Of a stretch of DNA of 64,000 bases, positions 3,828 through 14,994 are shown piece by piece. The notes below the pieces were generated by a model. That model worked only from the letters and a program-made list of their open reading frames with translations. It made no database searches and was not told the origin of the DNA. The stretch is from the sequence record ON190024.1; one strand, 5' to 3'. The translations under genes were made by a program, and so were the position numbers. Position 1 is the stretch's first letter. The number at the start of each line of letters is the position of its first letter.

Positions 3828-4358
3828 CTATTTGCGCCCTTTACGATTTGCCTTATTTGCTTTTCTTTTTGCTCTACGCAACTCTTTGCGTTTTGCGATT
3901 TTGTCTGCACGTCTAACTGCATCATAATCCGCAGCACACGACGCAGCAAACGCATCAGGCTTGAAAACGGGTTCTTGACCCACGTATCCCAAGATAGTGC
4001 CCTTAGCTTCGTTATACGCAACGTGTGAACGATGGGATGGGTCTGGGTTGATGTCAACGTGAACTTCAAACCCACGAGTACCACACATTGGCTTAACACG
4101 CAGGGCGGTTTCACCTGCTTTATAGACTTCATTCATCAAACGACTACGAATACCATCTTTACAAGACATGTACGCTGGTTCAGTTTCGATAGATTTGAAT
4201 ACTTGAGCGCCTTTACTACCCTCAAGGTGAATGATGATTACAGTAGCGTAACTAATCATATCACTCTTACGCTTGCTATCACACCCAACATAAATCGTAC
4301 TGTTCGGATGACTGTTATTGATAGCTGTTTCAATTGCTTCCCAATCGAACATTTTCAC
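3828..4358 (-). CDS. RNase H-like nuclease (YkuK/DUF458-like)
   Basis: IYVGCDS, RLMNEV, VHVDIN and KPDAFAASCAAD motifs with conserved acidic residues; basic C-tail. Confidence 0.7.
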   Translation of the reverse strand: MKMFDWEAIETAINNSHPNSTIYVGCDSKRKSDMISYATVIIIHLEGSKGAQVFKSIETEPAYMSCKDGIRSRLMNEVYKAGETALRVKPMCGTRGFEVHVDINPDPSHRSHVAYNEAKGTILGYVGQEPVFKPDAFAASCAADYDAVRRADKIAKRKELRRAKRKANKANRKGRK

Positions 4359-4403: not shown

Positions 4404-5840
4404 TTAAAAGCTGTAGCGATCAACGCCTACAGTTTTCAGCATGATCTTGACTGGCTCAAGCTCACCACCCAACAGTGAAGTCAGGATAGATGGGCTACAA
4501 CCCGATACCAGTGCAGTACCCGCTTCGCCAGCTTTAACCGGAACGTTGCCAAGACGACCACGAATGTTCCAGAAGACTAGTTGTGGCATTTCATAGCCAG
4601 CACGTGCGTACATAGCTTTGATTGCGTCGAAGTTTGCACGTTCGCCGCGACCGTACCAGCCACCACCAGTATTTGCTTGGTCGAATTCCATGTCGCTCAT
4701 GATAAGCAACTTAGTTGGCATTTCTTCTTGTGAAAGATTTGCACGTTTTGCACGTTCTAACAGAACGTTGAAGCACTTACCGATGTTTGTGCTCATGTCT
4801 TCGCCTGATCGATTCATGTTGTCAAGACGCTCTTTTAGTGAGCTACCGCGTAACTGGTGGAAGTGCGGATCGCTTGAGAACGAAATGAACTGATCTTTGA
4901 AGATGCCTTCATTGCGTTCAGCAACATAGATGCCAAGAGACATTGCAACTTGCTTACAAGTCACACCTGAACGATCTGTACCTGCGTTGATTGGCGTGCT
5001 CATAGAGCCAGACACGTCAACAACTGGGATGATGCGCTCATCAGAGCCTTCCATGTAGTTCGGCAGAGCCTTCCATTGCTCGTTCGCTACAGACGCATTA
5101 CCATGACTAACGCTCTTAACGACATCATATGGGAACAAGGCACCAGCGTTGATCTTCGCTTCACCTTTTTGAAGCGACTCGATGTAGCTTGTGTAACGAG
5201 CAGAAGCGTTACGACCGAATGCTTGTTGATAACGAGCCGACGCTACAGATGGCAACTTACCGAAGTCGATTGTATCCCATTCTTGCGCACACATCTTCTG
5301 TTCAACAGTGTCAGACAAAAGTGCTAGAATCTTACGCCACTGCTTCGCAGTTACGCCAAGAGACTTGATTGTGCGCTTGAACACATGACCGTTTTTGCTG
5401 TTCTCGCGTGGGAACCACTTCGCAGCGAGACTGTTCTTGTCGTTTACAATCGCATTTGACCACAATGTGATCGCGTCTTTTTCAAGACTTGTACCGAACG
5501 CAGAAATCAAGTCGTCGAAACGACCTAGTTCTGGAATTTTCGACATTACAGCACGAGCTACGTCAGGCTGCTCATTACAAAGCTTAGTGAATAGAGTACG
5601 GAAAGTACCACGTTCACCCGCACCACCGCGAACATCACGAGACCACAAAAGAATGCGTGTCGCTAGTTCTGGGTTTTCTGCAAACGCACGACCGAACAGT
5701 GTTTTAGACTGATCGTTACCACGCATAGCAGCAATACCGAAGAACAAGTTTAGACACTCGTTACCTGAAGTGCTGTGAGTAACTGCACCGTTTGCTGTAC
5801 GTGAATCGTTAGTGGTCATTGCGTTCATAAATGCTGACAT
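4404..5840 (-). CDS. DUF2828-family TROVE/Ro60-like protein with C-terminal vWA domain
   Basis: N-terminal NGAVTHSTSGNECLNLFF, WSRDVRGGAGER, GRFDDL and AAKWFPRE motifs. vWA MIDAS DVSGS plus MSDMEFD and VFWN. The Ro60/TROVE relationship is from family recall, not from a search. Confidence 0.75.
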   Translation of the reverse strand: MSAFMNAMTTNDSRTANGAVTHSTSGNECLNLFFGIAAMRGNDQSKTLFGRAFAENPELATRILLWSRDVRGGAGERGTFRTLFTKLCNEQPDVARAVMSKIPELGRFDDLISAFGTSLEKDAITLWSNAIVNDKNSLAAKWFPRENSKNGHVFKRTIKSLGVTAKQWRKILALLSDTVEQKMCAQEWDTIDFGKLPSVASARYQQAFGRNASARYTSYIESLQKGEAKINAGALFPYDVVKSVSHGNASVANEQWKALPNYMEGSDERIIPVVDVSGSMSTPINAGTDRSGVTCKQVAMSLGIYVAERNEGIFKDQFISFSSDPHFHQLRGSSLKERLDNMNRSGEDMSTNIGKCFNVLLERAKRANLSQEEMPTKLLIMSDMEFDQANTGGGWYGRGERANFDAIKAMYARAGYEMPQLVFWNIRGRLGNVPVKAGEAGTALVSGCSPSILTSLLGGELEPVKIMLKTVGVDRYSF

Positions 5841-5889
5841 TGTTTATTCCTCATATTAAATTGCTGTAAAATGTCGTTTCGATGTGATG

Positions 5890-5918
5890 ATTATACACGG
5901 ATTTGAACCCGTGTAAAC
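5890..5918 (-). promoter_or_regulatory. T4-early-type promoter of DUF2828 gene
   Basis: GTTTAC-17 nt-TATAAT on the minus strand; the spacer contains an inverted repeat. Confidence 0.85.
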
Positions 5919-5932
5919 ACTTTTTTCAATTT

Positions 5933-6247
5933 TTATCGAAAATTCATTCGAGTTAGATTCGTACCGTTTTCGTGAATCTCAACTAGCACGCGACCGCCCG
6001 TTTCATAAGACGTTCGGAGAGAACGATAACCATGCTCTTCGAAGAATGTACGAATAATAGTCGCACCACGCTTGTCTTTATCAGCAGCGTGAATGGGCAC
6101 TTTTACGATGATAGGGAAACTAGACCCCGACTCAACTGCGTGCATGAATTCTTTCTCACATTCGCTCGTGTAATGCTCGGTAAGAATTCGTTTTTCTTCT
6201 GCTTCACGAGCGTGAATTTGTTGTTTGAGTTCATTATGATTAATCAT
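5933..6247 (-). CDS. hypothetical protein
   Basis: 104-aa ORF with overlapping stop/start to its neighbour. Confidence 0.7.
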   Translation of the reverse strand: MINHNELKQQIHAREAEEKRILTEHYTSECEKEFMHAVESGSSFPIIVKVPIHAADKDKRGATIIRTFFEEHGYRSLRTSYETGGRVLVEIHENGTNLTRMNFR

Positions 6248-6579
6248 TGAAACCCCGCTTGTTTGTTTTCTCGAATTGTCAATTTGACAAAAGAATATGA
6301 GTAATCTCTCATATCACGCGGATCGCCAGAGTAATGCCCGAGCTGTGCGTCGAAGTTATGAAAACCCTCGCGTCGCATGACGCCTTTGATGAGAGACATC
6401 ATTTCATCACAACATTCATTGCGGTCAACATTCACCTGAATCGTGATTGGAAACTGAAACCCAGCAACGCCACCGATTTTACGTTCGATTGCTTTGCGCA
6501 TTTCAACTACGAAGAGTTCTTCACGAGTTGAGCGATTCTGTTTGACTTTTTGAATTAATGTATCGTATAAATTACCCAT
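6244..6579 (-). CDS. hypothetical protein
   Basis: Likely start MGNLYD at 6579, overlapping the upstream stop. Confidence 0.65.
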   Translation of the reverse strand: MGNLYDTLIQKVKQNRSTREELFVVEMRKAIERKIGGVAGFQFPITIQVNVDRNECCDEMMSLIKGVMRREGFHNFDAQLGHYSGDPRDMRDYSYSFVKLTIRENKQAGFQ

Positions 6580-6946
6580 CAATATATTCCTTAATCGGCT
6601 TAGAAAAGTGACGAATACAAGAACTGTCAAGTCGTTTACGACCATCACCATCTATATCAGGTAGTGTGTATTCGTCATTAAACGGCTGACCGCTTTCTTT
6701 CGCAATCTCATAGGCATCGGCTCGATTGAAGTATTCACCACAATAGTTGATAAACCCCTGACCGCGATCCCCGAGTTCGTTTCGATGTTCATATGTACAA
6801 CCTAGTTCTTTCAATAACTTAAAGACTGATTGCATGTTTCGACCGAAATGGCAGCTATCAGCAACAACAATGTCGCGCACTTCACCGTTCGGTAGTGTCA
6901 CTCGAATTGCATTAGCAGCAGACGATATTACATTGACGTGCGACAT
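6572..6946 (-). CDS. conserved phage hypothetical protein
   Basis: QGFINYCGEYFNRADAYEIAKESGQ resembles a common phage family of unknown function. Confidence 0.65.
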   Translation of the reverse strand: MSHVNVISSAANAIRVTLPNGEVRDIVVADSCHFGRNMQSVFKLLKELGCTYEHRNELGDRGQGFINYCGEYFNRADAYEIAKESGQPFNDEYTLPDIDGDGRKRLDSSCIRHFSKPIKEYIDG

Positions 6947-7284
6947 GTATCGTACCTCATAAAAATTGAACCGACGCGCTTATACTGACCAGAGTGAGAA
7001 AGCAACAGAGCCATTTTACTATGACCAACGGGATTGCTTGTCACTAGAACAACAGTGCGCGGAAAATTACGATGATCAATCGCATGAGAGAGAATATCAT
7101 ACCCCTCTCTACCAACATCATCACCTAGGTCATTATCCATGAATAGAGTGATGTCAGTTAGATTTGTGTGCTTGACGAAATTCATACCGTCTTCGAATGT
7201 TCGAATTACGAGTTTTTCATCATCACGTACGTAATCAGACGTGAACTTATCAATGTCGCGCTGATCATCAATCATGACGTGCAT
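6928..7284 (-). CDS. cyclic-phosphate-processing receiver-like domain protein (cREC-like)
   Basis: IDDQR ... MDNDLG ... GYDIL ... TSNPVG pattern of the stand-alone divergent receiver family linked to RNA repair. Confidence 0.7.
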   Translation of the reverse strand: MHVMIDDQRDIDKFTSDYVRDDEKLVIRTFEDGMNFVKHTNLTDITLFMDNDLGDDVGREGYDILSHAIDHRNFPRTVVLVTSNPVGHSKMALLLSHSGQYKRVGSIFMRYDTCRTSM

Positions 7285-7316
7285 AATATTTCTCTTTCGT
7301 TAGTGTTGATAAATAC

Positions 7317-7345
7317 ATCATACAGGTTCAACAAACGGAAGTCAA
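7317..7345 (-). promoter_or_regulatory. sigma70-type early promoter for the 7284->5933 operon
   Basis: TTGACT-17 nt-TATGAT on the minus strand. Confidence 0.75.
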
Positions 7346-7346
7346 C

Positions 7347-7718
7347 ATGAAAGACGAAAAAATTATTTCTTTTGATGAATACCTAAACGAAGGGTGGTTT
7401 GAAAGGCAATGGGCTAGATATAAGGCAGGTGAAGATGCACGCAGCATAAAGAAACTAGCTAAGATGCATACCAAGCTTCTACACATCGAACAGAAAGCAA
7501 AGCAAAACAAATACCGATACGAAGCCGTACGGTTCAACTACGAACACATCAAAATGAATGTGCTCGATGCCAAGAAGCTAATTAACAAGCTGCGATACAA
7601 GAAAGGGATTAGTCAAGAGCTAGTTCAGGCAATGGATAAACTAGACATTGAACTTGATAGACTCAACGACTTTGCCGTTGAGGGATTGCATGAGCTAATG
7701 ATTCAACATAAGCTATAA
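7347..7718 (+). CDS. hypothetical late protein, possible internal head protein
   Basis: TAAATA late-type promoter upstream, N-terminus MKDEKIISFDEYLNE, followed by a terminator. Confidence 0.65.
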   Translation: MKDEKIISFDEYLNEGWFERQWARYKAGEDARSIKKLAKMHTKLLHIEQKAKQNKYRYEAVRFNYEHIKMNVLDAKKLINKLRYKKGISQELVQAMDKLDIELDRLNDFAVEGLHELMIQHKL

Positions 7719-7721
7719 AAG

Positions 7722-7748
7722 AAAAGCCCCGTTTTGGGGCTTTTTTTG
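7722..7748. terminator. bidirectional intrinsic terminator
   Basis: AAAAGCCCC-gtttt-GGGGCTTTTTTTT between convergent genes. Confidence 0.8.
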
Positions 7749-7749
7749 T

Positions 7750-7962
7750 TTAATGTGAGTGGCGTAACTTCTTTTCGATCATTCGATCTACAATCGTGGA
7801 GTACATAAGATGCTCTTTGTAGTATTTCTCATCAACTCGGTTGCACTGGAATTGTCGAAAATCTTTGCGTAAGCGGGCAATGAATTTATTAAGTGCTTTG
7901 CGCACTTTGCAAACTTCAGACAGTTCCATGCTTTTTAGTGTATCTTCAGAAAGTATTTCCAT
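7750..7962 (-). CDS. hypothetical protein
   Basis: 70-aa ORF with GAGG SD. Confidence 0.6.
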   Translation of the reverse strand: MEILSEDTLKSMELSEVCKVRKALNKFIARLRKDFRQFQCNRVDEKYYKEHLMYSTIVDRMIEKKLRHSH

Positions 7963-7991
7963 GATTGTTCACCTCTTAGTTAATAGAATAC

Positions 7992-8036
7992 GGGAGACAC
8001 GGGAATCGAACCCATTGCCTTGACCACATATCTCCC
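7992..8036 (-). ncRNA. miniature tRNA-like element (acceptor + T arm, no anticodon arm, no CCA)
   Basis: GGGAGATA-TGTGGTCAAGGCAA-TGGG-TTCGATT-CCCG-TGTCTCCC. Confidence 0.45.
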
Positions 8037-8060
8037 ACTGAGAGTTACGGCAATCTGAGG

Positions 8061-8291
8061 TTAGTGTGCTAGACGCATCAAACGGCGCATACGTTCGCGT
8101 TCAGATAAATCTTCCAAATTTTCTTGTTTCACCTCTTTGATTTCTTCTTCGGGTTCTTCAGCTTCCTTTTTGATTTTTTCAGCATCGGGACCGATGTTTT
8201 TCCAAAGCGAAGCATTTCGCCAGTTATCGTTAAAACCATTACCTAAACCGCGCCCTTCACGCGCATGAGATTTTTGATGAATGTTTTTCAT
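8061..8291 (-). CDS. hypothetical small charged protein
   Basis: 76-aa ORF whose start overlaps the upstream stop; part of it lies in the 127-bp duplication. Confidence 0.6.
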   Translation of the reverse strand: MKNIHQKSHAREGRGLGNGFNDNWRNASLWKNIGPDAEKIKKEAEEPEEEIKEVKQENLEDLSERERMRRLMRLAH

Positions 8292-8600
8292 TATTCGTTA
8301 GATTTCTTTGTTACTTGTCTTGCTACGCCAACAGCAGCAGCACCAGCAGCTACTTTAGCACCTGTTTTTGCCGNNNNNNNNNNNNNNNNNNNNNNNNNNN
8401 NNNNNNNNNNNNNNNNNNNNNNNNNNNNNNNNNNNNNNNNNNNNNNNNNNNNNNNNNNNNNNNNNNNNNNNNNACCGCGCCCTTCACGCGCATGAGATTT
8501 TTGATGAATGTTTTTCATTATTCGTTAGATTTCTTTGTTACTTGTCTTGCTACGCCAACAGCAGCAGCACCAGCAGCTACTTTAGCACCTGTTTTTGCCG
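8247..8600. other. assembly gap (100 N) flanked by an exact 127-bp duplication
   Basis: 8247-8373 is identical to 8474-8600. Confidence 0.9.
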
Positions 8601-8724
8601 CCTTACCGGCTTTTTTAGCGCCCGACTTGATACGATCTTTTACAGAACGTTTCTTTTTCTTTTTGTCTTCTGGGCGCGACTCTTCGATTTCTGACATGAA
8701 TTTGTCAAAGGTTTTCTCACTCAT
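8518..8724 (-). CDS. small basic late protein, possible internal head protein
   Basis: MSEKTFDKFMSEIEE N-terminus, Lys/Ala-rich, TAAATA upstream. Confidence 0.65.
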   Translation of the reverse strand: MSEKTFDKFMSEIEESRPEDKKKKKRSVKDRIKSGAKKAGKAAKTGAKVAAGAAAVGVARQVTKKSNE

Positions 8725-8761
8725 GACCTATCTCCAGTTAATTGAGTTCATTTGTATTTAG

Positions 8762-9139
8762 TCATGAAAAATCGAACTTTCGGGTTAATTGCACATCAAA
8801 TTTGCGCTCGAAACGACAACGCTCAGTACCGTAAAGCACATCATCGAGCGTAAAGCGTTTACGTTTTTGCGTGTGTAGGTTCATATAACGCTCTAGAGCA
8901 GCTTCTGAGTCGAATTCAATACGTTCACAACGTCTTTGTTCGGATGTCTGAGAATAATCGCTTACAACGCGATACAGAAACAATCCGCGTATCACAACTG
9001 CATTAAGAGAATTTGAAGTTTTTACAGTAACGCCGTCAATATCACCGAATTCACTCATGGTAAAGATTATCTCTGAGTCTGGCATTTCAGCGACGCGCTT
9101 CATTTTAGCTATTGATGTTCGTTTATTAGATTTGTACAT
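8762..9139 (-). CDS. hypothetical protein
   Basis: 125-aa ORF with GAGG SD. Confidence 0.6.
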   Translation of the reverse strand: MYKSNKRTSIAKMKRVAEMPDSEIIFTMSEFGDIDGVTVKTSNSLNAVVIRGLFLYRVVSDYSQTSEQRRCERIEFDSEAALERYMNLHTQKRKRFTLDDVLYGTERCRFERKFDVQLTRKFDFS

Positions 9140-9187
9140 TTTATCACCTCATAACGACTGTACACGATTTATCAGACGCCATAAACA

Positions 9188-9211
9188 AAAAAACCTGCTC
9201 AAGGCAGGTTC
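9188..9211 (-). terminator. terminator ending the stable-RNA cluster
   Basis: AACCTGC-cttga-GCAGGTT followed by a T-run on the minus strand. Confidence 0.8.
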
Positions 9212-9226
9212 TAATGTGCAATACAC

Positions 9227-9472
9227 AGACATTCGAGAATTGTTTTATCGTCTTTCCTTAAATCTCAATTGACTATCTCGATGTTTCTCATCAAGAGAAT
9301 ACCCATGATTCGGCATGAGACCTATTTCGTTTAACAGTACGAACACCGTCTTAATGGTCATTTCCTACCACGAGAATGCGACAGGCTCACGTCATCACTG
9401 AGAAAGCAGCTAGTGCGCCTCATTACTATTAAAGTTTGCTTCTTTGATTAGTAATATTGCTGTACAATGTCT
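9227..9472 (-). ncRNA. candidate ncRNA B1 (246 nt, end-paired, CAGCAA motif)
   Basis: Terminal helix AGACATT/AATGTCT; paralogous to 11502-11715 with a covarying hairpin. Confidence 0.65.
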
Positions 9473-9483
9473 TATTGCGAATT

Positions 9484-9572
9484 TGGCGGAGATACTGGGA
9501 ATCGAACCCAGAGAACGCTATTAACGTCCGACACCTTAGCAGGGTGCTGTCATACCTTTAGACCATATCTCC
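9484..9572 (-). tRNA. tRNA-Ser(GCT)
   Basis: Cloverleaf with long variable arm, loop CTGCTAA, encoded CCA. Confidence 0.95.
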
Positions 9573-9577
9573 GTAGA

Positions 9578-9757
9578 TCATTTCTTACCACGCTCTGCTT
9601 TGCTAATCTCGACAGCAGCGATTTGCGCGTTGGCTTCTTTCTCAGTGTCATGAGTACCAAGTACTCGACCTTTAGATGAAAGAGCAACCCATTTGTCGCC
9701 ACGCTTCTCGACTTTCTCAACAAGCTTGTGGTATTCATCAAAAGTTTTAAGTTTCAT
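9578..9757 (-). CDS. 59-aa late protein, possible internal head protein
   Basis: Manual translation MKLKTFDEYHKLVEKVEKRGDKWVALSSKGRVLGTHDTEKEANAQIAAVEISKAERGKK; perfect TATAAATA at 9783-9790. Confidence 0.7.
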   Translation of the reverse strand: MKLKTFDEYHKLVEKVEKRGDKWVALSSKGRVLGTHDTEKEANAQIAAVEISKAERGKK

Positions 9758-9782
9758 TTGTCATCCCTCAGTTAGTTTATTG

Positions 9783-9790
9783 TATTTATA
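9783..9790 (-). promoter_or_regulatory. T4 late promoter TATAAATA
   Basis: Exact consensus upstream of 9757. Confidence 0.8.
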
Positions 9791-10013
9791 ACTGAACGAC
9801 TTTTAAACAGTGGCATGCTGCTCTCATGCTCAGACACATATTTGCTCTTATTGCAGGCGTGTGCCACGCGCAGCGCAGATCCCTTTTGATAATTTAATGA
9901 CCAGCGGGACTCTTAGCAGGTCTTACACATAGCCTTTCAGCTATATCTTCTTTTAAGACCATAGTGTCGTACGGTCTAATCACTCTCTTTCGATTCGCGT
10001 TGCTAAGTGAATT

Positions 10014-10090
10014 TGGTGCCCAACCCGAGATTCGAACTCGGATCATCTAGTGTTTGAAACTAGCGCCTCTGCCAATTGGACTAGTTGGGC
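10014..10090 (-). tRNA. tRNA-Leu(CAA)
   Basis: Cloverleaf, loop TTCAAAC, CCA. Confidence 0.92.
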
Positions 10091-10205
10091 TTGAATGAGC
10101 TGCCGCAACTCTTTAATCCCTAACGCCTGTCAGCTTTCGCCCGGCTGAGACCGTTTTCAACGGCGGTAGTCTAGCTTCGTGTAGAACGCGGCTTATGCTA
10201 GAGTT

Positions 10206-10282
10206 TGGTACGCACGGGCGGATTCGAACCGCCATCCCTGAGATTTTAAGCCTCATGCCTCTGCCAATTGGACCACGTGCGC
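10206..10282 (-). tRNA. tRNA-Leu(TAA)
   Basis: Cloverleaf, loop CTTAAAA, CCA. Confidence 0.92.
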
Positions 10283-10284
10283 AG

Positions 10285-10358
10285 TGGAGCCCGAACAGAG
10301 AATCGAACTCTGACCGCGGGATTTGCAATCCCTCATACTTCCATTATACGATTCGGGC
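10285..10358 (-). tRNA. tRNA-Cys(GCA)
   Basis: Cloverleaf, loop TTGCAAA, U73-CCA. Confidence 0.92.
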
Positions 10359-10461
10359 AATATGTTAGTGCATTGCATGAGCTACTGGCGATCTTAATGG
10401 GTATTTCAAGCATTCAGAATTCCCATGCGCTACTACAATGCTTTTTTCGCTAAATGCACTT

Positions 10462-10539
10462 TGGGGTGACAGACGGGGATCGAACCCGCATCTTCCGGAA
10501 TCACAACCCGGGGGTATTTCCACTTCACCCACTGCCACA
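10462..10539 (-). tRNA. tRNA-His(GTG)
   Basis: Cloverleaf, loop TTGTGAT, C73; the genomic -1 base reads T rather than G. Confidence 0.88.
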
Positions 10540-10592
10540 CCAAAGTACACTTTGGGATGTTTACGACATCAAACGAATGCGCTCCCTGTGCA

Positions 10593-10832
10593 TTAATCAG
10601 TTTTCTTTAAGTAGATACTATCAGGCGATAGCTCTCTCGTAAACATATTTTTGAAATAAATTTCGATGTCATCAGAAGTTGTTGAAGACTCAATTTCAAG
10701 AGCACGTTCTAAAATCTTACCGCGTTTATAACCAGCGCGCCAACAGTCAAACATAAGTCTGTCCATGCGTTTCAGTTTTTCAATTTGGTTTTGATTTACG
10801 TATTCGTGAGTTTCAAGTAATACAGGCGTCAT
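10593..10832 (-). CDS. hypothetical protein
   Basis: 79-aa ORF between tRNAs. Confidence 0.6.
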   Translation of the reverse strand: MTPVLLETHEYVNQNQIEKLKRMDRLMFDCWRAGYKRGKILERALEIESSTTSDDIEIYFKNMFTRELSPDSIYLKKTD

Positions 10833-10855
10833 AATTTATTTCTCATCATAAAGAA

Positions 10856-10929
10856 TGGTAGTCCCTAGTGGAATCGAGCCACTTCTTTCTCTGTGTAAAA
10901 GAGACGTACTGCCATTATACTAAGGGACC
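10856..10929 (-). tRNA. tRNA-Val(TAC)
   Basis: Cloverleaf, loop TTTACAC, T-loop CTCGATT, CCA. Confidence 0.9.
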
Positions 10930-10934
10930 AAAAT

Positions 10935-11008
10935 TGGAGCGGGTACACGGACTCGAACCGAGACGAACGACTTGGAAGGACGTCATGCTACCATTACATC
11001 ATACCCGC
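10935..11008 (-). tRNA. tRNA-Gly(TCC)
   Basis: Loop CTTCCAA, single mismatches in the anticodon and T stems, CCA. Confidence 0.88.
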
Positions 11009-11012
11009 ATTG

Positions 11013-11207
11013 TTAATCTGAAGCGTCGAACAAATCACGTATTGCACGCAGATTCGTAAGCTCTACAGTAAGTGTTCTTATAAAGAACGGGTTGGTCTCT
11101 TTCGCGAGACGATTTTCAACACAGCGAATCTTATCGCGTATGTTGCCCTTGCTTAGTGTAAAGTAGTCATGCTTCTTATCCTCTTTGCTTGAATTTGGTG
11201 GAGACAC
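11013..11207 (-). CDS. hypothetical protein (true start uncertain)
   Basis: Short ORF between tRNAs; the annotated start overlaps a tRNA. Confidence 0.45.
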   Translation of the reverse strand: MSPPNSSKEDKKHDYFTLSKGNIRDKIRCVENRLAKETNPFFIRTLTVELTNLRAIRDLFDASD

Positions 11208-11271
11208 CGATACTCGAAATCGGATCTAATGGCTTATGAGACCATTGCTCTACCACTTGAGCTACATCTCC
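11196..11271 (-). tRNA. tRNA-CAT (probably elongator Met)
   Basis: Cloverleaf, loop CTCATAA, CCA. Confidence 0.9.
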
Positions 11272-11501
11272 AAAAGTAGTAATTAACTCATTTAATCGCA
11301 CACGGGCTGACACCATATATTCATGGTCTGAGCGAGGAACCACATAGTGGGTACTATTACCTCATCTTAGTTTTGATTGTTTTACATGACGATAACTAGA
11401 AACGTTCATAATAATGCCACGCGATACTTCCTGTATCACGGCTAACTGAGTTAGCATAAAGTGCCTTTCGGCTGTAGTGTCGTTTCCGACGAATTAAGTA
11501 C

Positions 11502-11715
11502 AGACAATACCGAAGTGTTTTTTCGTCTTTAACATGAATCGGAGTTGACTATCTTGTTGCTTCTCAACAAGCAAATATCGTCTGTTTCAGCGACGCGCCT
11601 ATCTGACTATTTCTAGGCAGAGAGAATCTTTCCTTTCAAGCTGCACCGAAGCACTGCCCAGGTTAAGATCATTACCATTTTTAGTAAGATTTTAATTTGT
11701 TGCTGTATATTGTCT
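11502..11715 (-). ncRNA. candidate ncRNA B2 (214 nt, end-paired, CAGCAA motif)
   Basis: Terminal helix AGACAATA/TATTGTCT; paralog of 9227-9472. Confidence 0.65.
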
Positions 11716-11776
11716 CTCAAACCATGCTCGTGATATGCCGAAGCAAGTATCATTCGCCGCATGATAGAGCTTAATC

Positions 11777-11852
11777 TGGCATCCCCAGAGGGATTCGAAC
11801 CCACAACCCACGACTTAGAAGGTCGTTGCTCTTCCAATTGAGCTATGAGGAC
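11777..11852 (-). tRNA. tRNA-Arg(TCT)
   Basis: Cloverleaf, loop CTTCTAA, CCA. Confidence 0.93.
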
Positions 11853-11929
11853 GTTGAAAAGAATTCGATCCATGAGCTATTGCGTAGAAGATGGTAGTAA
11901 AGAGACTCTACACTCATGTGATCGAAATT

Positions 11930-12004
11930 TGGTGGACACGCAGGGAGTCGAACCCTATCTTCCTCATTGCAAGTGAGGCGCTTTCCCAATTAAGCTAACG
12001 GCCC
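11930..12004 (-). tRNA. tRNA-Ala(TGC), irregular acceptor stem
   Basis: Loop CTTGCAA and G3:U70 present; the acceptor needs a bulge to pair. Confidence 0.8.
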
Positions 12005-12011
12005 ATAATTA

Positions 12012-12221
12012 TTACAACTGTGTGATTGAAATATGATCCCAGCCGTATAGACCTTCAAGCTCTTCAATCGGCTCACCAACAATATCAGAAATATATTCAG
12101 CAACTTTTGCTTCAATTTCTTCATCAGATAGTTTTTCATCAACGGAAAAAGCATCTTCGTTATTGTTGCCACCGAAATAGCCACCAATGTCATATTCACA
12201 CCATATTGAAATATAGTTCAT
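12012..12221 (-). CDS. small acidic hypothetical protein
   Basis: Start MNYISIWCEY with GAGA SD. Confidence 0.65.
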   Translation of the reverse strand: MNYISIWCEYDIGGYFGGNNNEDAFSVDEKLSDEEIEAKVAEYISDIVGEPIEELEGLYGWDHISITQL

Positions 12222-12246
12222 GTTATTCTCACAGTTGTTTAGAAAA

Positions 12247-12322
12247 TGGTGCCCTGACACGGATTTGAACCGCGAACCTGCTCATTACAAGTGAGCTGCA
12301 CTGCCAGTTGTGCTATCAGGGC
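12247..12322 (-). tRNA. tRNA-Thr(TGT)
   Basis: Cloverleaf, loop CTTGTAA, CCA. Confidence 0.95.
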
Positions 12323-12360
12323 GTTACTGAGTGTTATTACTTGCGTCGTCCAGACCAGAG

Positions 12361-12449
12361 ATACCAACTCTGAAAGGGAATCGAACCCCAAACATTTCTT
12401 TTCGTAAGAAGAATATTAGTAATTGTTTGCTGAAAACACTCTTCGGTAT
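12361..12449 (-). ncRNA. candidate small RNA: motif hairpin plus T-arm
   Basis: GAAGAGT-GTTTTCAGCAAAC...-ATTCTTC hairpin, then GGGG-TTCGATT-CCCT; ATACC/GGTAT closing. Confidence 0.55.
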
Positions 12450-12450
12450 T

Positions 12451-12524
12451 TGGCAGGGGATAACGGATTCGAACCGGTACTGCGTGAGTCAAAGTCACGT
12501 ATGCTGCCTTTACATCAATCCCCT
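12451..12524 (-). tRNA. tRNA-Gln(TTG)
   Basis: Cloverleaf, loop CTTTGAC, G73-CCA. Confidence 0.92.
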
Positions 12525-12543
12525 ATTATTCTTAAATTATCTT

Positions 12544-12619
12544 TGGCGGAACCGACGGGTTTCGAACCCGCTACCTTCTCCGTGACAGGGAGACATGCAA
12601 CCACTTACACCTCGGCTCC
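12544..12619 (-). tRNA. tRNA-Asp(GTC)
   Basis: Cloverleaf, loop CTGTCAC, CCA. Confidence 0.95.
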
Positions 12620-12842
12620 CCAAAGACAACTTAATAGTTGCTTTGTGCTCGTGCAAACCAAACACTAGCTGAACGACTTCTTGATTTCTTAGTTTTACTA
12701 CACATTCCCTCGCTAAAGGGCATCATCGTTCTTGTTTTTAACAAATGCTATGAAAGTGAGATCTTGCTATGCAGGAGGTTTCAAATCTCTGCACACAAGC
12801 AGACATCGCAACCAACGCTCTCAAACATTGTCATGGTCAAAC

Positions 12843-12917
12843 TGGCGCTCCGTGTAGGACTCGAACCTACAGCCTTTCGGTTAACAGCCGATTGCTCCAC
12901 CATTGAGCTAACGAAGC
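12843..12917 (-). tRNA. tRNA-Asn(GTT)
   Basis: Cloverleaf, loop CTGTTAA, CCA. Confidence 0.95.
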
Positions 12918-12920
12918 GTA

Positions 12921-13298
12921 TTATTTATTCGATGCGTGTTCTTCTCTGTGGCAATTCGCACATAACATGATGCATTTATCAAGCTCTGGGACAATTCTCT
13001 CCCATCGTTTGCAACCGCCACTAGCAATGCCAAAGTCTTTCCCATTCGGGTCTGTATGATGAAACTCTAATGCTTCAATGCACTTATCATACCCACATCG
13101 TTCACAGCAACCACCTTTATATTCAACCGCCCTCAATTTAGTACGGCGTCTATATGATACCACTGCTTCTTTATTCTTTTGTTTTCTCTCGTCATCTGTT
13201 CGAAATTTCAATTTCTTACCGTTGTATAAACCAGCACATCGACGACTACAGAATTTATTGTTGTGTGTTTCTGCACCACACTCTAAGCATTTATTCAT
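12921..13298 (-). CDS. small HNH endonuclease
   Basis: CxxC/CxxxC zinc motifs; CERCGY...LEFHH...KCIMLCANCHREEH. Confidence 0.8.
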   Translation of the reverse strand: MNKCLECGAETHNNKFCSRRCAGLYNGKKLKFRTDDERKQKNKEAVVSYRRRTKLRAVEYKGGCCERCGYDKCIEALEFHHTDPNGKDFGIASGGCKRWERIVPELDKCIMLCANCHREEHASNK

Positions 13299-13439
13299 CT
13301 GAATTACTCAATTAATAGTTAATAAAGTAACCCAAAGGAGAGTATAGCCCGCCACATTCGTAAGTGAATGACTCTATTACTACTTAGCAATTACATTCAA
13401 GCGTTACCAAGAACCATGCCACGTAGCTTTAAATTAAAC

Positions 13440-13497
13440 AGCAATCCTTTTCTCTTTTTCCAAATAAAAGTTTTGTATTGTTTGCTGAAAGATTGCT
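13440..13497 (-). ncRNA. candidate 58-nt end-paired RNA with CAGCAA motif
   Basis: AGCAATC-TTTCAGCAAAC...AAAAG-GATTGCT. Confidence 0.55.
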
Positions 13498-13503
13498 TAA
13501 TTC

Positions 13504-13577
13504 TGGCAGGGACATAGAGATTCGAACTCTAACGAACGGGTTTGGAATCCGTCATGCTGCCGTTACATCATGTCCCT
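13504..13577 (-). tRNA. tRNA-Trp(CCA)
   Basis: Cloverleaf, loop TTCCAAA, G73-CCA. Confidence 0.92.
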
Positions 13578-13583
13578 AAAATT

Positions 13584-13657
13584 TGGTAGCCCCAGACAGA
13601 CTCGAACTGTCAACGTGCGATTATCGGTCGCGTGTTTTACCGTTAAACTATGGAGCT
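13584..13657 (-). tRNA. tRNA-Ile(GAT)
   Basis: Cloverleaf, loop CCGATAA, CCA. Confidence 0.9.
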
Positions 13658-13721
13658 AAAGTGAGCACATTTCAGTGCTCGTGTTAATCGGTTAAGTGAC
13701 TAAACTTCCCGGTTAACTAAT

Positions 13722-13820
13722 TGGCGGAAGACTAGGGATTCGAACCCTAACATCACCTCCCGGTGACCGACGGTTTTCAAGACCGTTGCCGCTACCCAGA
13801 ATCTTTCGGCTAAGCCTTCC
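13722..13820 (-). tRNA. tRNA-Ser(TGA), enlarged D loop
   Basis: Loop CTTGAAA, long variable arm, CCA. Confidence 0.9.
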
Positions 13821-13827
13821 ATTAATT

Positions 13828-13904
13828 TGGTTGCGTGGGGCTGGATTCGAACCAGCGTTCTCCGGCTTATGAGACCGACGAGATGACCACTTCTCTACCC
13901 CGCA
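13828..13904 (-). tRNA. tRNA-Met(CAT), initiator-like
   Basis: Resembles bacterial tRNA-fMet body (GCGGGG...CCCC-CGCAACCA); loop CTCATAA. Confidence 0.88.
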
Positions 13905-13913
13905 ATTATTCAA

Positions 13914-14001
13914 CAGCTTGCGTTCTTTGGTCTGTTTATCGCTGTCTGAACTGAGTTCGCCGAGCGATCAATAGATTAAGTTAAATTGCAGTATGCAAGC
14001 T
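13914..14001 (-). ncRNA. candidate end-paired RNA with CTGCAA motif variant
   Basis: AGCTTGC-ATACTGCAAT...ATCGCT/AGCGAT hairpin...AAAGAAC-GCAAGCT. Confidence 0.5.
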
Positions 14002-14006
14002 AAATT

Positions 14007-14092
14007 TGGTGGAGCGTAGAGGAATCGAACCTCTCTTCCCATTACGGGACACGGATTTACAGTCCGCTGCGCCACCTTGGCGCATACGCTCC
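14007..14092 (-). tRNA. tRNA-Tyr(GTA)
   Basis: Loop CTGTAAA, variable arm, CCA. Confidence 0.92.
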
Positions 14093-14098
14093 GGAATT

Positions 14099-14172
14099 TG
14101 GTACTCGATACGGGAGTCGAACCCGTCCTACTTCCTTGAAAGGGAAGTGACCTACCGATAGTCGAATCGAGC
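14099..14172 (-). tRNA. tRNA-Glu(TTC)
   Basis: Cloverleaf, loop CTTTCAA, CCA. Confidence 0.92.
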
Positions 14173-14235
14173 ATTAAATTGTATATTGATTTGCAAGCTA
14201 ATCAACTCGCAAAGCGATACACAATGTATCTAATT

Positions 14236-14312
14236 TGGTACGCCGCCCTGGACTCGAACCAGACACCTGAGAGTTAAAAGCTCCCTGCTCTTCCATGATG
14301 AGCTACCGACGC
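14236..14312 (-). tRNA. tRNA-Lys(TTT) copy 1
   Basis: Loop CTTTTAA, CCA. Confidence 0.9.
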
Positions 14313-14323
14313 ATTATAAAATC

Positions 14324-14398
14324 TGGTGGGTCGCATGAGATTCGAACTCACACCGGTCTGGTTAAAAGCCAGATGTACTACCGTTATACGAACGACCC
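14324..14398 (-). tRNA. tRNA-Lys(TTT) copy 2
   Basis: Loop CTTTTAA, CCA; body unrelated to copy 1. Confidence 0.92.
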
Positions 14399-14404
14399 AG
14401 AATG

Positions 14405-14479
14405 TGGTGCACCCCCTCGGAATCGAACCGAGCACTGCGGGACTTCAATCCGCCGCTTTTCCTGATAAGCTAAGGGTGC
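14405..14479 (-). tRNA. tRNA-Phe(GAA)
   Basis: Loop TTGAAGT, CCA. Confidence 0.88.
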
Positions 14480-14480
14480 A

Positions 14481-14557
14481 TGGTACGCATGAAGAGATTC
14501 GAACTCTTATCATTCGGCTTCTAAGACCGACGCCTCTGCCAATTGGGCTACATGCGC
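14481..14557 (-). tRNA. tRNA-Leu(TAG)
   Basis: Loop CTTAGAA, CCA. Confidence 0.92.
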
Positions 14558-14584
14558 ATTAAATTTTGTAAACTTCTTTTCTTC

Positions 14585-14614
14585 ATTGTACATGATGTTT
14601 ATATCGTTGTAAAC
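14585..14614 (-). promoter_or_regulatory. early-type promoter inside the tRNA cluster
   Basis: GTTTAC(A)...TACAAT with upstream A-tract; GATGTTTA/TAAACATC inverted repeat overlaps it. Confidence 0.7.
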
Positions 14615-14779
14615 ATCTTTTTTTGAATTTATTTTGAAGAACTTAACGTTTTCATTTTTCTATGTGTTAATCTTAACACTCGATCAAGACATCTTAAACA
14701 CTAATTTGTGAAAAAGTTCGTTAAATTCTATCATCACGACAGTACTTAACGAGATACGGTCCTAAGCGTATCAAATCAA

Positions 14780-14907
14780 TTCAGAATGGTGAGACTTGAA
14801 CTCACTTCGAGTAATAGCGTAAACTAACAGTTGTTGCCAGAGGCTATCAATTATTCTCTACCGAGTATGTTGCAACTCTGCATTTCCCCATTTCTAGGCA
14901 TTCTGAA
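14780..14907 (-). ncRNA. tRNA-like element without CCA
   Basis: TTCAGAATG/CATTCTGAA terminal helix, T-arm GTGAG-TTCAAGT-CTCAC, internal GATAGC/GCTATT hairpin. Confidence 0.5.
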
Positions 14908-14910
14908 ATA

Positions 14911-14986
14911 TGGCACCCAATACAAGATTCGAACTTGTAACCTTCGCCTTCGTAGGGCGCTGCTCTTCCAATTGAGCTAATCGGGC
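14911..14986 (-). tRNA. tRNA-Arg(ACG)
   Basis: Loop CTACGAA, CCA. Confidence 0.92.
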
Positions 14987-14994
14987 ATTAAAAC

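What the first reader, a model, noticed from the sequence alone, without database searches (positions are those of the whole stretch)
9227..11715. Two paralogous 214-246 nt ncRNAs (B1, B2) hidden in the tRNA cluster
B1 (9227-9472) and B2 (11502-11715) share a terminal helix (AGACATT/AATGTCT vs AGACAATA/TATTGTCT), the 5' CAGCAA motif, a TTACTA...T[A/G]GTAA hairpin, a covarying hairpin (CTTGATG-AGAAA-CATCGAG vs CTTGTTG-AGAAG-CAACAAG), then ATAGTCAA and a 3' block AAAGACGA[T/A]AAAACA. The central parts differ. B1 is the last element before the cluster terminator. No ORF explains either. End-pairing with the motif next to the 5' end is Y-RNA-like, and the variable core could recruit different partners.
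Basis: seen in the sequence. Interest (0 to 1): 0.8.

Follow-up and report, generated by a model that had tools for sequence, protein, structure and literature searches.

The report
Phage Y-RNA-like RNAs beside Ro60-like gene
Two unannotated, structured 214- and 246-base RNAs in the tRNA cluster of a KVP40-type Vibrio phage carry the same helix-plus-ACAGCAA tag as the leader of a nearby Ro60-like protein gene, and that tag recurs beside the same gene in 12 other phage lineages, so they are most likely enlarged Y-RNA-like partners of that protein.

Summary
B1 (9227-9472, minus strand) and B2 (11502-11715, minus strand) are real paralogous structured RNAs. They sit at fixed positions in KVP40-type Vibrio phages, match no Rfam family and are not explained by any conserved ORF. 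A covariance model built only from B2 orthologs finds every B1 (E about 1e-15), and 26 of 41 modelled pairs show compensatory changes.

- A gene 3.4 kb downstream on the same strand (4404-5840) encodes a DUF2828/DUF7788 protein whose predicted fold matches Ro60 over its full length.
- Its 5' leader carries the same module as the B RNA ends: the GACAUU helix paired with the start codon, followed by UACAGCAA.
- The module (terminal helix, then CAGCAA) lies beside this gene, on the same strand, in all 12 other phage lineages I checked. It occurs as 50-65-nt hairpins and as 110-130-nt RNAs with a tRNA-like core.
- The small forms give sub-threshold matches to Rfam YrlA and to Dictyostelium Class I RNA.

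B1 and B2 are enlarged variants found only in the Vibrio phages. Binding to the protein, RNA processing and function are inferred, not shown.

The parts
9227..9472 (-). B1 RNA, 246 nt. It is the last element of the tRNA cluster, starting 11 nt after tRNA-Ser(gct). The 3' end may extend 2 nt (CUGU).
   Evidence: Orthologs lie at the same position in 10 genomes. The B2-trained covariance model scores it 85.5 bits, E 1e-15. No Rfam match.
11502..11715 (-). B2 RNA, 214 nt, between tRNA-Arg(tct) and tRNA-Met(cat).
   Evidence: Orthologs in 10 genomes. The RNAalifold consensus has 41 pairs, 17 with compensatory changes. Model R1 was built from these sequences.
9457..9472 (-). B1 end module, 5' side: helix strand AGACAUU, then G, then UACAGCAA.
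9227..9233 (-). B1 end module, 3' helix strand AAUGUCU, followed by GU.
   Evidence: (helix 1).
11700..11715 (-). B2 end module, 5' side: AGACAAUA plus UACAGCAA.
   Evidence: Compensatory variants are AGAUAAU/AUUAUCU (phage 1.081.O) and AGGCAAU/AUUGCCU (phage F86).
11502..11509 (-). B2 end module, 3' helix strand UAUUGUCU.
9303..9318 (-). B1 hairpin P3, loop CCGAAU. The B2 counterpart is 11579-11595.
   Evidence: Helix 6: all 4 pairs show changes on both sides and 98.7% of cells are paired.
9276..9297 (-). B1 hairpin P4 (CUCUUGAUG-AGAAA-CAUCGAGA). The B2 counterpart is 11553-11571.
   Evidence: Helix 7: 6 of 7 pairs show changes on both sides.
9233..9268 (-). B1 3' hairpin P5 (UUGAGA/UCUCGA), enclosing the conserved loop AAAGACGAUAAAACA (9241-9255). 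The B2 counterpart is 11510-11542.
   Evidence: Helix 8: 100% of cells paired, 2 of 4 pairs covary.
9190..9212 (-). Intrinsic-terminator-like hairpin plus U-run that closes the tRNA/B1 transcription unit.
   Evidence: Conserved in the orthologs.
4404..5840 (-). Gene for a 478-aa Ro60-like protein (DUF2828 + DUF7788; KVP40.0300, annotated 'RNA-binding protein'). Proposed partner of B1 and B2.
   Evidence: Pfam hits at 1e-45 and 1e-29. PHROG 850. AlphaFold model with pLDDT 79. Foldseek top hits are Ro60 structures over the full length, E 3e-8 to 2e-6, TM 0.53-0.59.
5836..5875 (-). Third copy of the end module, in the leader of the Ro60-like mRNA. GACAUU pairs with AAUGUC (start codon AUG plus UC). 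UACAGCAA and the Shine-Dalgarno sequence lie in the loop.
   Evidence: Conserved in KVP40, nt-1, 6E35.1a, F86, VH7D and L013. Phage D479 has AGAAAU/AUUUCU instead.
5890..5917 (-). Sigma-70-type promoter of the Ro60-like gene (TTTACA-16-TATAAT). This places the module inside the transcript.
   Evidence: Best promoter match (11 of 12) in 4300-18000.
13439..13497 (-). 58-nt sibling RNA: stem AGCAAUCUU/AGGAUUGCU plus UCAGCAAAC. This is the minimal form of the module.
   Evidence: Rfam RF01414 (Dictyostelium Class I RNA) scores 27.4 bits, full length, E 8.6e-4 in the local search.
12329..12441 (-). 113-nt sibling RNA: stem GAGUGUU/AACACUC plus UUCAGCAAAC. It encloses a T-arm (GGGGUUCGAUUCCCU) and a D-arm-like hairpin, in the YrlA-like permuted tRNA order.
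   Evidence: Orthologs in nt-1 (L002 5522-5638) and L013 (3079-3187).
6928..7284 (-). Context gene: cyclic-phosphate-processing receiver domain protein (cREC_REC).
   Evidence: Also seen next to the Ro60-like gene in L011 and L013.
3828..4358 (-). Context gene: RNaseH_like (PF04308) protein directly downstream of the Ro60-like gene.
   Evidence: Same neighbour in L012 and L013.

Best explanation
B1 and B2 are paralogous non-coding RNAs cut out of the phage's tRNA-cluster transcript. They belong to a family of phage Y-RNA-like RNAs that serve the phage's own Ro60-like protein (window 4404-5840).

The family tag is the pairing of the RNA's two ends into a 6-9-bp helix. CAGCAA (usually UACAGCAA) follows directly on the 5' side. 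An A-rich stretch precedes the 3' strand, which ends in CUG(U). I propose that the Ro60-like protein recognises this module.

The same module in the protein's own mRNA leader buries the start codon. The protein would therefore repress its own translation when free, and B1, B2 and the smaller sibling RNAs would titrate it.

The large, different bodies of B1 and B2 would act as in other Y RNAs: they would tether or gate the protein toward different partners or substrates. The likely setting is RNA repair or quality control, or counter-defence, around the phage tRNAs.

Shown here: the structures, their conservation and covariation, the shared module, the Ro60 fold of the protein, and the association across phages. 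Inferred: binding, autoregulation, processing and the biological role.
For: 1. Real structured paralogs.
- 19 B1 and B2 sequences have 94.8% of cells paired, against 77.2% in shuffles and 31-46% with slid partners.
- 26 of 41 pairs carry changes on both sides, against 13.6 +/- 1.8 in shuffles.
- The B2-only model finds all B1 copies at E 1e-13 to 1e-16.

2. Co-occurrence.
- B1 and B2 each hit 50 phage records, all Vibrio phages.
- Close homologs of the protein (>=60% identity) occur in 51 records.

3. The protein is Ro60-like. Foldseek top hits are 9kop, 2i91, 1yvr, 9l5y and 9nep over about 510-550 aligned columns, E 3e-8 to 2e-6.

4. The module occurs exactly three times in the window (B1, B2 and the leader of that gene) against 0.07 expected. 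In the leader, GACAUU pairs with the start codon in the minimum-energy fold of 5 of 9 leaders folded. Phage D479 has a compensating variant.

5. The module accompanies this gene in distant phages.
- It lies on the same strand beside the gene in Felixounavirus Bas63, Klebsiella phi1_175008, two Aeromonas phages, Listeria LP-064, Mycobacterium Faith1, Campylobacter PC14, a Staphylococcus phage, Bacillus Tsamsa, Ralstonia RSP15, Fusobacterium FNU3 and a metagenomic T4-like phage.
- In seven of those loci there are 22 on the gene strand and 1 on the other; shuffles give 1.76 +/- 1.4.

6. Links to known Y-like RNAs.
- RNAs with a T-loop next to the Klebsiella phage gene match Rfam YrlA at 36.4 and 34.3 bits. 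CAGCAA aligns to the YrlA GNCGAA position.
- Chen et al. 2014 (PMC4201824) found Y RNAs within 4 kb of Ro60 on the same strand. B1 is 3.4 kb away.

7. Published precedent.
- Thermus phage phiLo Ro60 binds two upstream Y-like RNAs (PMC12135203).
- The Bas63 homolog gp130 counters the Ppl defence, and its authors guessed that nearby 'tRNAs' might be Y RNAs (bioRxiv 10.1101/2024.10.10.617714).
Against: - No transcript, processing or binding data exist for any of these RNAs.
- B1 and B2 lack the tRNA-like domain of YrlA and the literal GNCGAA/CGAA motif, and they do not match the YrlA or Y_RNA models.
- The protein does not hit Pfam TROVE. Its resemblance to Ro60 rests on a predicted structure with TM about 0.55.
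- The leader helix is only 6 bp and weak (about -3.5 kcal/mol). Part of its conservation could reflect conservation of the first codons.
- B2 lies 5.7 kb from the gene, beyond the 4-kb rule.
- The covariation counts were made on an alignment fitted to the model.
Confidence: 0.6

Rival explanations
1. B1 and B2 are cis-acting spacers of the tRNA precursor. On this view they are folded segments that guide or block host RNases during tRNA maturation, the shared tag is a nuclease or processing signal, and there is no role in trans and no link to the Ro60-like protein.
For: - They lie inside a densely packed tRNA transcription unit.
- The tag sits exactly at the presumed 5' boundary, and B1 starts 11 nt after a tRNA.
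- Other spacers in the cluster also hold stable conserved hairpins.
Against: - The module follows the Ro60-like gene, not tRNAs. In Faith1, the Staphylococcus phage and Fusobacterium FNU3 it flanks the gene where no tRNA is annotated within several kb (Faith1, FNU3) or within about 2 kb (Staphylococcus).
- It also sits in an mRNA leader behind its own promoter.
- Four helices and long single-stranded blocks are conserved over 200 nt, more than a cleavage signal needs.
Confidence: 0.15
2. B1 and B2 are stable phage RNAs of the T4 'species 1 and 2' (rnaC/rnaD) kind. They would act on their own, for example as decoys for host nucleases or tRNA-targeting defences, and the shared tag would serve stability rather than protein recognition.
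For: - T4 has two stable RNAs of 139 and 119 nt of unknown function as the last elements of its syntenic tRNA cluster.
- The cluster is in the same genome neighbourhood: Acb1/57B and gene 1 lie upstream.
Against: - Model R1 finds nothing in the T4 region.
- rnaC and rnaD lack the terminal helix plus CAGCAA arrangement.
- This view does not explain the copy of the tag in the Ro60-like gene's leader, nor its co-occurrence with that gene family across phyla.
Confidence: 0.15
3. The tag is a DNA-level signal, such as an operator, a recombination or homing site, or a promoter element, and the RNA folds are incidental.
For: - The tag is a short, nearly invariant sequence that recurs in intergenic DNA.
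- Homing endonuclease genes are scattered through related tRNA clusters.
Against: - The tag is strictly strand-specific: 22 against 1.
- It is always tied to a downstream complementary strand whose sequence changes by compensatory substitutions.
- It lies downstream of the promoter's -10 element in the leader.
Confidence: 0.05
4. The regions encode small proteins: a 38-aa ORF in B1 and a 26-aa or 86-aa ORF over B2.
For: ORFs exist, and one record annotates a 'hypothetical protein' over B2.
Against: - The 38-aa ORF survives only in genomes that are at least 93% identical. It changes length in VS2 and is gone in nt-1, L013, 6E35.1a and F86, while the RNA helices persist.
- The 86-aa ORF runs through tRNA-Arg.
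- Single-base indels occur among orthologs.
Confidence: 0.02

Closest known systems
Bacterial and phage Y RNA-like RNAs (YrlA, Rfam RF02553; Yrn1; Thermus phage phiLo Yrl1/Yrl2) bound by Ro60/Rsr
   Same: - The ends pair into a closing stem.
- A conserved single-stranded motif sits beside the stem on the 5' side. In the cmscan alignment CAGCAA falls on the YrlA GNCGAA position.
- They are encoded near a Ro60-fold protein gene on the same strand, often in two or more copies.
- Sibling RNAs in the same cluster carry the permuted tRNA-like core (T-arm before D-arm).
   Different: - B1 and B2 are about twice as long and have no tRNA-like domain.
- The motif is ACAGCAA, not GNCGAA/CGAA.
- There is no hit to RF02553 or RF00019 even at E<=10.
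- The protein partner belongs to DUF2828/DUF7788, not Pfam TROVE.
- They are embedded in a tRNA operon.
Dictyostelium Class I RNAs (Rfam RF01414; Kjellin et al. 2021, PMC7919456)
   Same: - A short stem joins the 5' and 3' ends.
- A conserved motif lies directly after the 5' strand. The Rfam consensus reads GaUcuC-CUUACAGCAAU...GagAuC-UG.
- The interior is A-rich and variable, and the 3' end is CUG(U).
- The phage 50-65-nt forms, including window 13439-13496, align full length at 24-30 bits.
- B1 and B2 carry the same end module.
   Different: - B1 and B2 are 214-246 nt against 42-65 nt and are not hit by the model.
- Scores for the small phage RNAs are below the gathering score (41.5).
- Class I RNAs are eukaryotic, have their own DUSE promoter, are reported as unique to Dictyostelia, and are known to bind an RRM protein (Rnp1A/CIBP).
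- Common descent versus convergence is untested.
Phage T4 stable RNAs rnaC and rnaD (species 1 and 2)
   Same: - Two stable RNAs of unknown function at the distal end of the tRNA cluster of a related (Straboviridae) phage, in the same genome neighbourhood.
- rnaC also contains a T-arm.
   Different: - No sequence or structure match to model R1.
- No terminal helix plus CAGCAA module.
- Whether T4 carries a Ro60-like gene was not checked: it is not among the listed rows, which shows only 60 of 710 records.
Autoregulatory mRNA mimics of RNA-binding proteins, such as ribosomal protein operators and T4 gp32/RegA-type translational repression
   Same: The leader of the Ro60-like mRNA copies the proposed binding module of the RNA ligands and overlaps the Shine-Dalgarno sequence and start codon.
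   Different: Purely inferred here. The helix is short. In other phage lineages the modules near the gene are separate hairpins that do not overlap the start codon.

Membership tests
Y RNA / YrlA (Rfam RF02553, RF00019) | 5' and 3' ends pair to form the closing (Ro-binding) stem. | tested here: met
   Helix 1: 7 pairs kept in all 19 sequences, 3 of them with changes on both sides (A-U/U-A, A-U/G-C, C-G/U-A).
Y RNA / YrlA (Rfam RF02553, RF00019) | Conserved GNCGAAN0-1G / CGAA motif beside the stem (PMC4201824, PMC12135203). | tested here: not met
   B1 and B2 have (G/A)UACAGCAA at that place. cmscan aligns CAGCAA of a sibling phage RNA to the YrlA 'cggCgaAU' positions. The position is the same but the motif differs.
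Y RNA / YrlA (Rfam RF02553, RF00019) | tRNA-like domain (T-arm, D-arm) in at least one Y RNA per genome. | tested here: not met
   B1 and B2 have no tRNA or YrlA hit and no T-loop. The feature is met by the sibling RNA at 12329-12441.
Y RNA / YrlA (Rfam RF02553, RF00019) | Encoded within about 4 kb of a Ro60 ortholog on the same strand. | tested here: met
   B1 is 3,386 nt and B2 is 5,661 nt upstream of the Ro60-fold gene, on the same strand. The protein is a structural relative of Ro60, not a Pfam TROVE member.
Y RNA / YrlA (Rfam RF02553, RF00019) | Score at or above the family's covariance-model gathering threshold. | tested here: not met
   No hit at gathering score or at E<=10 over B1 and B2.
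Y RNA / YrlA (Rfam RF02553, RF00019) | Bound by Ro60 in vivo. | not testable with these tools
   Needs immunoprecipitation or gel shift.
Dictyostelium Class I RNA (RF01414) | Short terminal stem plus an 11-nt motif (consensus CCUUACAGCAA) directly after the 5' strand. | tested here: met
   B1 has AGACAUU-G-UACAGCAA and B2 has AGACAAUA-UACAGCAA. For the Rfam consensus. Eight of the 11 motif positions match.
Dictyostelium Class I RNA (RF01414) | Length 42-65 nt and covariance-model score at or above 41.5 bits. | tested here: not met
   B1 is 246 nt and B2 is 214 nt, with no hit. The 58-nt sibling scores 27.4 bits.
Dictyostelium Class I RNA (RF01414) | Own upstream DUSE promoter; dictyostelid host. 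| tested here: not met
   These are phage RNAs inside a tRNA operon.
T4 rnaC/rnaD stable RNAs | Sequence or structure similarity to T4 species 1 or 2 RNA. | tested here: not met
   R1 finds nothing in T4 69000-74500. The folds and motifs differ. Only the position in the cluster is alike.
Ro60 / TROVE proteins (for the proposed partner, 4404-5840) | HEAT-repeat ring closed by a von Willebrand A domain with a MIDAS motif. | tested here: met
   The AlphaFold model (pLDDT 79, pTM 0.77) aligns over its full length to Ro60 structures. An invariant D-V-S-G-S-M stretch (D275-M280) is present. This is a predicted structure only.
Ro60 / TROVE proteins (for the proposed partner, 4404-5840) | Match to Pfam TROVE (PF05731), or sequence-level match to solved Ro60. 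| tested here: not met
   Pfam gives DUF2828 + DUF7788 only. A profile search against PDB reaches TROVE proteins only at E about 1.4, in the vWA part.

The most novel reading that the evidence does not exclude
The terminal-helix-plus-ACAGCAA RNAs of phages (small hairpins, tRNA-like forms and the large B type) and the Class I RNAs of Dictyostelium may be one ancient RNA class whose cognate protein is the DUF2828-type Ro60 relative. DUF2828 is a family that the papers retrieved mention mainly for plant proteins.

If so, phages would show what Class I RNAs bind. B1 and B2 would show that the module can carry large, exchangeable effector domains, and that the protein reads its own mRNA through the same module.
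Probability: 0.3. Interest if true: 0.9.

Novelty: new variant of a known kind. Interest (0 to 1): 0.78.

Why it matters
- **Candidate RNA partners.** A very common but uncharacterised phage protein family gets concrete candidate RNA partners. The family has 710 phage records and more than 7,000 database proteins. One member, Bas63 gp130, has been reported to defeat a bacterial defence system.
- **Unannotated sequence explained.** It accounts for unannotated 'spacers' and odd small hairpins around the tRNA genes of many phages.
- **A testable recognition code.** It proposes a simple code (end helix plus ACAGCAA) and a feedback loop on the protein's own mRNA.
- **A link to Dictyostelium.** It ties a 20-year-old orphan RNA class of Dictyostelium to a candidate protein family.
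- **Modularity.** B1 and B2 show that the module can be attached to large, diverging bodies. That is what one expects if Y-like RNAs act as adaptors.

Tried and rejected
- **Single-sequence folding.** It gave no signal for B1 or B2 (z -1.0 and -1.5). The case rests on comparison between genomes.
- **Rfam.** Nothing over B1 or B2 at gathering score or at E<=10.
- **RNAalifold on the joint MAFFT alignment.** It recovered only the end helix and the 3' hairpin, because the inner hairpins were misaligned. This was solved by modelling B2 alone and realigning.
- **Wider collections.** An IMG/VR pattern scan returned only KVP40 and VH7D themselves. The metagenome pattern scan returned 16 loci, none of which matches the model, so they are chance hits. 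B-type RNAs therefore look confined to KVP40-type Vibrio phages. Phage D479 has one more divergent copy (L011 1233-1543).
- **Protein structure.** Single-sequence AlphaFold of the protein failed (pLDDT 37). The alignment-based run worked. Plain sequence search against PDB found only repeat-protein noise.
- **Shared k-mers.** Comparing the gene leader with the tRNA cluster in Bas63 and phiWae14 showed nothing. The link appeared only when the helix-plus-motif rule was used.
- **T4 rnaC/rnaD.** No similarity.
- **Small ORFs.** Not conserved.
- **Promoters upstream of B1 or B2.** None convincing.
- **Papers not obtainable.** I could not get the Burroughs and Aravind RNA-repair paper, the Wolin review or the Avesson 2011 paper.


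Full report
**Where the window comes from.** Window 9000-12200 is 100% identical to Vibrio phage PVA8 and 97.5% identical to KVP40, a T4-related Schizotequatrovirus. ARAGORN finds 27 tRNA genes at 9484-17066, all on the minus strand. B1 (9227-9472) and B2 (11502-11715) are therefore read on the minus strand. In the KVP40 record nothing is annotated at either place.

**Checking the observation.** B1 is followed by a terminator-like hairpin at 9190-9212.
- B1 and B2 share a 5' block of about 16 nt and a 3' domain of about 60-100 nt. Their central parts differ.
- Direct blastn between them gives E 1e-7.
- Both have orthologs at fixed positions in every related phage I fetched: KVP40, VS2, ValKK3, VH7D, nt-1, 1.081.O, 6E35.1a, F86 and a metagenomic contig. 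B2 always lies between tRNA-Arg(tct) and tRNA-Met(cat), and B1 always follows the last tRNA-Ser(gct).
- Each hits 50 phage records, all Vibrio phages.

**Structure and covariation.**
- For ten B2 orthologs RNAalifold predicts 41 pairs, 17 with compensatory changes. The end helix alone shows AGACAAU/AUUGUCU, AGAUAAU/AUUAUCU and AGGCAAU/AUUGCCU.
- A covariance model built from these ten B2 sequences finds every B1 over its full length at 74-89 bits, E 1e-13 to 1e-16, although no B1 was in the training set.
- On the resulting 19-sequence alignment, 94.8% of cells form pairs. Shuffles give 77.2% and slid partners give 31-46%.
- 26 of 41 pairs change on both sides, against 13.6 +/- 1.8 in shuffles and 5-10 with slid partners.
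- Four helices are common to B1 and B2: the end helix, two internal hairpins and a 3' hairpin that encloses the conserved AAAGACGAnAAAACA loop. The other helices belong to the B2 central domain.
- This alignment was fitted to the model, which favours it. The plain MAFFT/RNAalifold result points the same way.
- Single-sequence folding energy is not unusual.

**Not a protein and not a known RNA family.**
- The 38-aa ORF inside B1 survives only in near-identical genomes and is lost in nt-1, L013, 6E35.1a and F86.
- The 86-aa ORF over B2 runs through a tRNA.
- Rfam gives no match over either RNA, at gathering score or at E<=10.

**The neighbouring protein.** On the same strand, 3,386 nt downstream of B1, is a 478-aa ORF (4404-5840).
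- Its Pfam domains are DUF2828 and DUF7788, and KVP40 annotates it as 'RNA-binding protein'.
- An AlphaFold model built with a 35-sequence alignment (pLDDT 79) has Ro60 structures as its eight best PDB matches over the full length: Xenopus and human Ro60, a TROVE domain, and Ro60 of Thermus phage phiLo. E-values run from 3e-8 to 4e-4 and TM from 0.42 to 0.59. vWA domains come next.
- Sequence methods alone do not reach TROVE.
- Neighbouring genes encode a cyclic-phosphate-processing receiver domain and an RNaseH-like protein. An Acb1-type 2H phosphoesterase lies upstream of the tRNA cluster.

**The same module in the protein's own leader.**
- The pattern GACAWTNTACAGCAA occurs exactly three times in the 64-kb window: at the 5' ends of B1 and B2, and at 5861-5875. 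Only 0.07 matches are expected.
- The third site lies between the best sigma-70-type promoter of the region (5890-5917) and the start codon of the Ro60-like gene.
- There, GACAUU pairs with AAUGUC, which is the AUG plus two bases. The Shine-Dalgarno sequence lies in the loop.
- This pairing is the predicted minimum-energy fold in the window, KVP40, nt-1, 6E35.1a and F86.
- Phage D479, whose second codon differs, has AGAAAU/AUUUCU instead.
- The leader therefore copies the end module of the B RNAs. This is the classic layout for a protein that represses its own translation.

**A wider family.** Weak hits of the B2 model led to other RNAs with the same end module.
- In the window these are a 58-nt hairpin (13439-13497) and a 113-nt RNA (12329-12441). 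The second encloses a T-arm and a D-arm-like hairpin in the permuted order typical of YrlA.
- I then scanned loci around homologs of the protein in distant phages. The rule was a helix of at least 7 bp whose 5' strand is directly followed by CAGCAA.
- Homologs of the protein occur in 710 phage records from many host phyla.
- All twelve further lineages examined have such RNAs beside the gene on the same strand: Bas63, Klebsiella phi1_175008, Aeromonas 4_4572 and phiWae14, Listeria LP-064, Mycobacterium Faith1, Campylobacter PC14, a Staphylococcus phage, Bacillus Tsamsa, Ralstonia RSP15, Fusobacterium FNU3 and a metagenomic T4-like phage. They often come as two to five tandem copies.
- In seven of those loci there are 22 on the gene strand and 1 on the other; block shuffles give 1.76 +/- 1.4.
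- In Faith1, the Staphylococcus phage and FNU3 the RNAs flank the gene with no tRNA annotated close by: none in the fetched flanks for Faith1 and FNU3, and the nearest about 2 kb away in the Staphylococcus phage. The association is therefore with the gene, not with tRNAs.
- Thirty-six modules aligned by the motif give this consensus: 5' (a)ag(g/a), stem, uUa, CAGCAA, A-rich stretch, stem', c.ug(u). B1 and B2 fit it exactly.

**Relation to known families.**
- Next to the Klebsiella phage gene, two RNAs match Rfam YrlA below threshold (36.4 and 34.3 bits against a gathering score of 69; E 1e-6 locally). CAGCAA aligns to the YrlA GNCGAA position.
- The small hairpins repeatedly match Rfam RF01414, the Dictyostelium Class I RNA, over its full length at 24-30 bits against a gathering score of 41.5. 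This includes the window's 58-nt RNA.
- The RF01414 consensus reads GaUcuC-CUUACAGCAAU...GagAuC-UG.
- Class I RNAs are described as 42-65 nt, with a 6-bp stem joining the ends and an 11-nt motif next to the 5' strand. They are reported as unique to Dictyostelia (PMC7919456).
- T4 rnaC and rnaD occupy the same position in T4's cluster but share neither the module nor similarity to the model.

**Literature.**
- Y RNAs lie within 4 kb of Ro60 on the same strand in bacteria and some phages (PMC4201824).
- Thermus phage phiLo Ro60 binds two upstream Y-like RNAs and host PNPase (PMC12135203).
- A preprint reports that Bas63 gp130, a 45%-identical homolog of the window's protein, has a Ro60 fold and counters the Ppl defence. 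Its authors suggest that some downstream 'tRNA genes' might be Y RNAs, without identifying any.
- I found no paper describing B1, B2, the ACAGCAA module in phages, or the leader mimic.

**Interpretation.**
- The best-supported reading is that B1 and B2 are enlarged members of a phage Y-RNA-like family whose recognition module is the end helix plus ACAGCAA.
- B1 and B2 are not members of YrlA or Class I by the families' own tests (length, models, tRNA-like domain). They work like them in layout.
- What the two different bodies do is unknown. By analogy they would bring different partners or substrates to the protein.
- The B type appears confined to KVP40-type Vibrio phages.

**Limits.** Everything about transcripts, binding and function is inference. 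The Ro60 assignment rests on a predicted structure. The cross-phage scan used a hand-made rule, a few of its hits inside coding regions are probably chance, and only 13 lineages in all were sampled.

Noticed in passing
window 15785-15897(-) and 17451-17567(-): Two tRNA-like genes of 113 and 117 nt. They have a full acceptor stem, D-arm, T-arm and encoded CCA, but about 45 extra bases in the anticodon arm. Rfam scores them as tRNA, ARAGORN does not call them, and KVP40 annotates them as 'tRNA-Pseudo'. The insert holds a hairpin with loop UGACAAG and, in one of them, GCUGCAAAC, which resembles the CAGCAA tag. Similar 117-121-nt 'tRNAs' occur in F86, 1.081.O and Aeromonas phage 4_4572.
   Followed up: partly
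window 17600-17770(-): A stretch with GAAUCUGU-ACGGCAAUC (a variant of the tag) followed by two separate T-arm-like hairpins (GGUUCGAAUCC). It may be a further tRNA-like module RNA or the remains of one.
   Followed up: no
window 5894-5915: A perfect inverted repeat (ACACGG...CCGUGU) fills the spacer between the -35 and -10 elements of the Ro60-like gene's promoter. It covaries in nt-1, 6E35.1a and F86. It could be an operator or the terminator of the upstream gene.
   Followed up: no
window 11272-11500(-) and 11716-11776(-): The spacers flanking B2 hold other conserved stable hairpins with GNRA or UUCG loops, and a conserved block GGUUCCUC...GACCAU...AUGGUGUC shared with 6E35.1a and F86. These may be further unannotated RNAs or processing signals.
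   Followed up: no
window 18873-19328(-): Homolog of the anti-CBASS 2H phosphoesterase Acb1 (T4 57B), E 2e-46, just upstream of the tRNA cluster. A dNMP kinase (T4 gene 1) lies next to it. This shows synteny with the T4 tRNA region.
   Followed up: partly
window 13914-14002(-) and 16758-16856(-): Two further candidates with a 7-8-bp end helix and ACUGCAA, the tag variant used by phage F86. Not verified by comparison between genomes.
   Followed up: no
L011 (Vibrio phage D479) 1233-1543: A more divergent RNA of about 310 nt with AGACAGUG...UAUUGUCU ends and UCCAGCAA, in D479's tRNA cluster. It lacks the AAAGACGA block and may be a third B-like type.
   Followed up: partly
L018 (Listeria phage LP-064) 14855-18567: In this phage the Ro60-like gene is followed by RtcB, an RNA ligase, a phosphohydrolase and a tRNA amidotransferase. 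This is a full RNA-repair neighbourhood, consistent with the proposed role.
   Followed up: no
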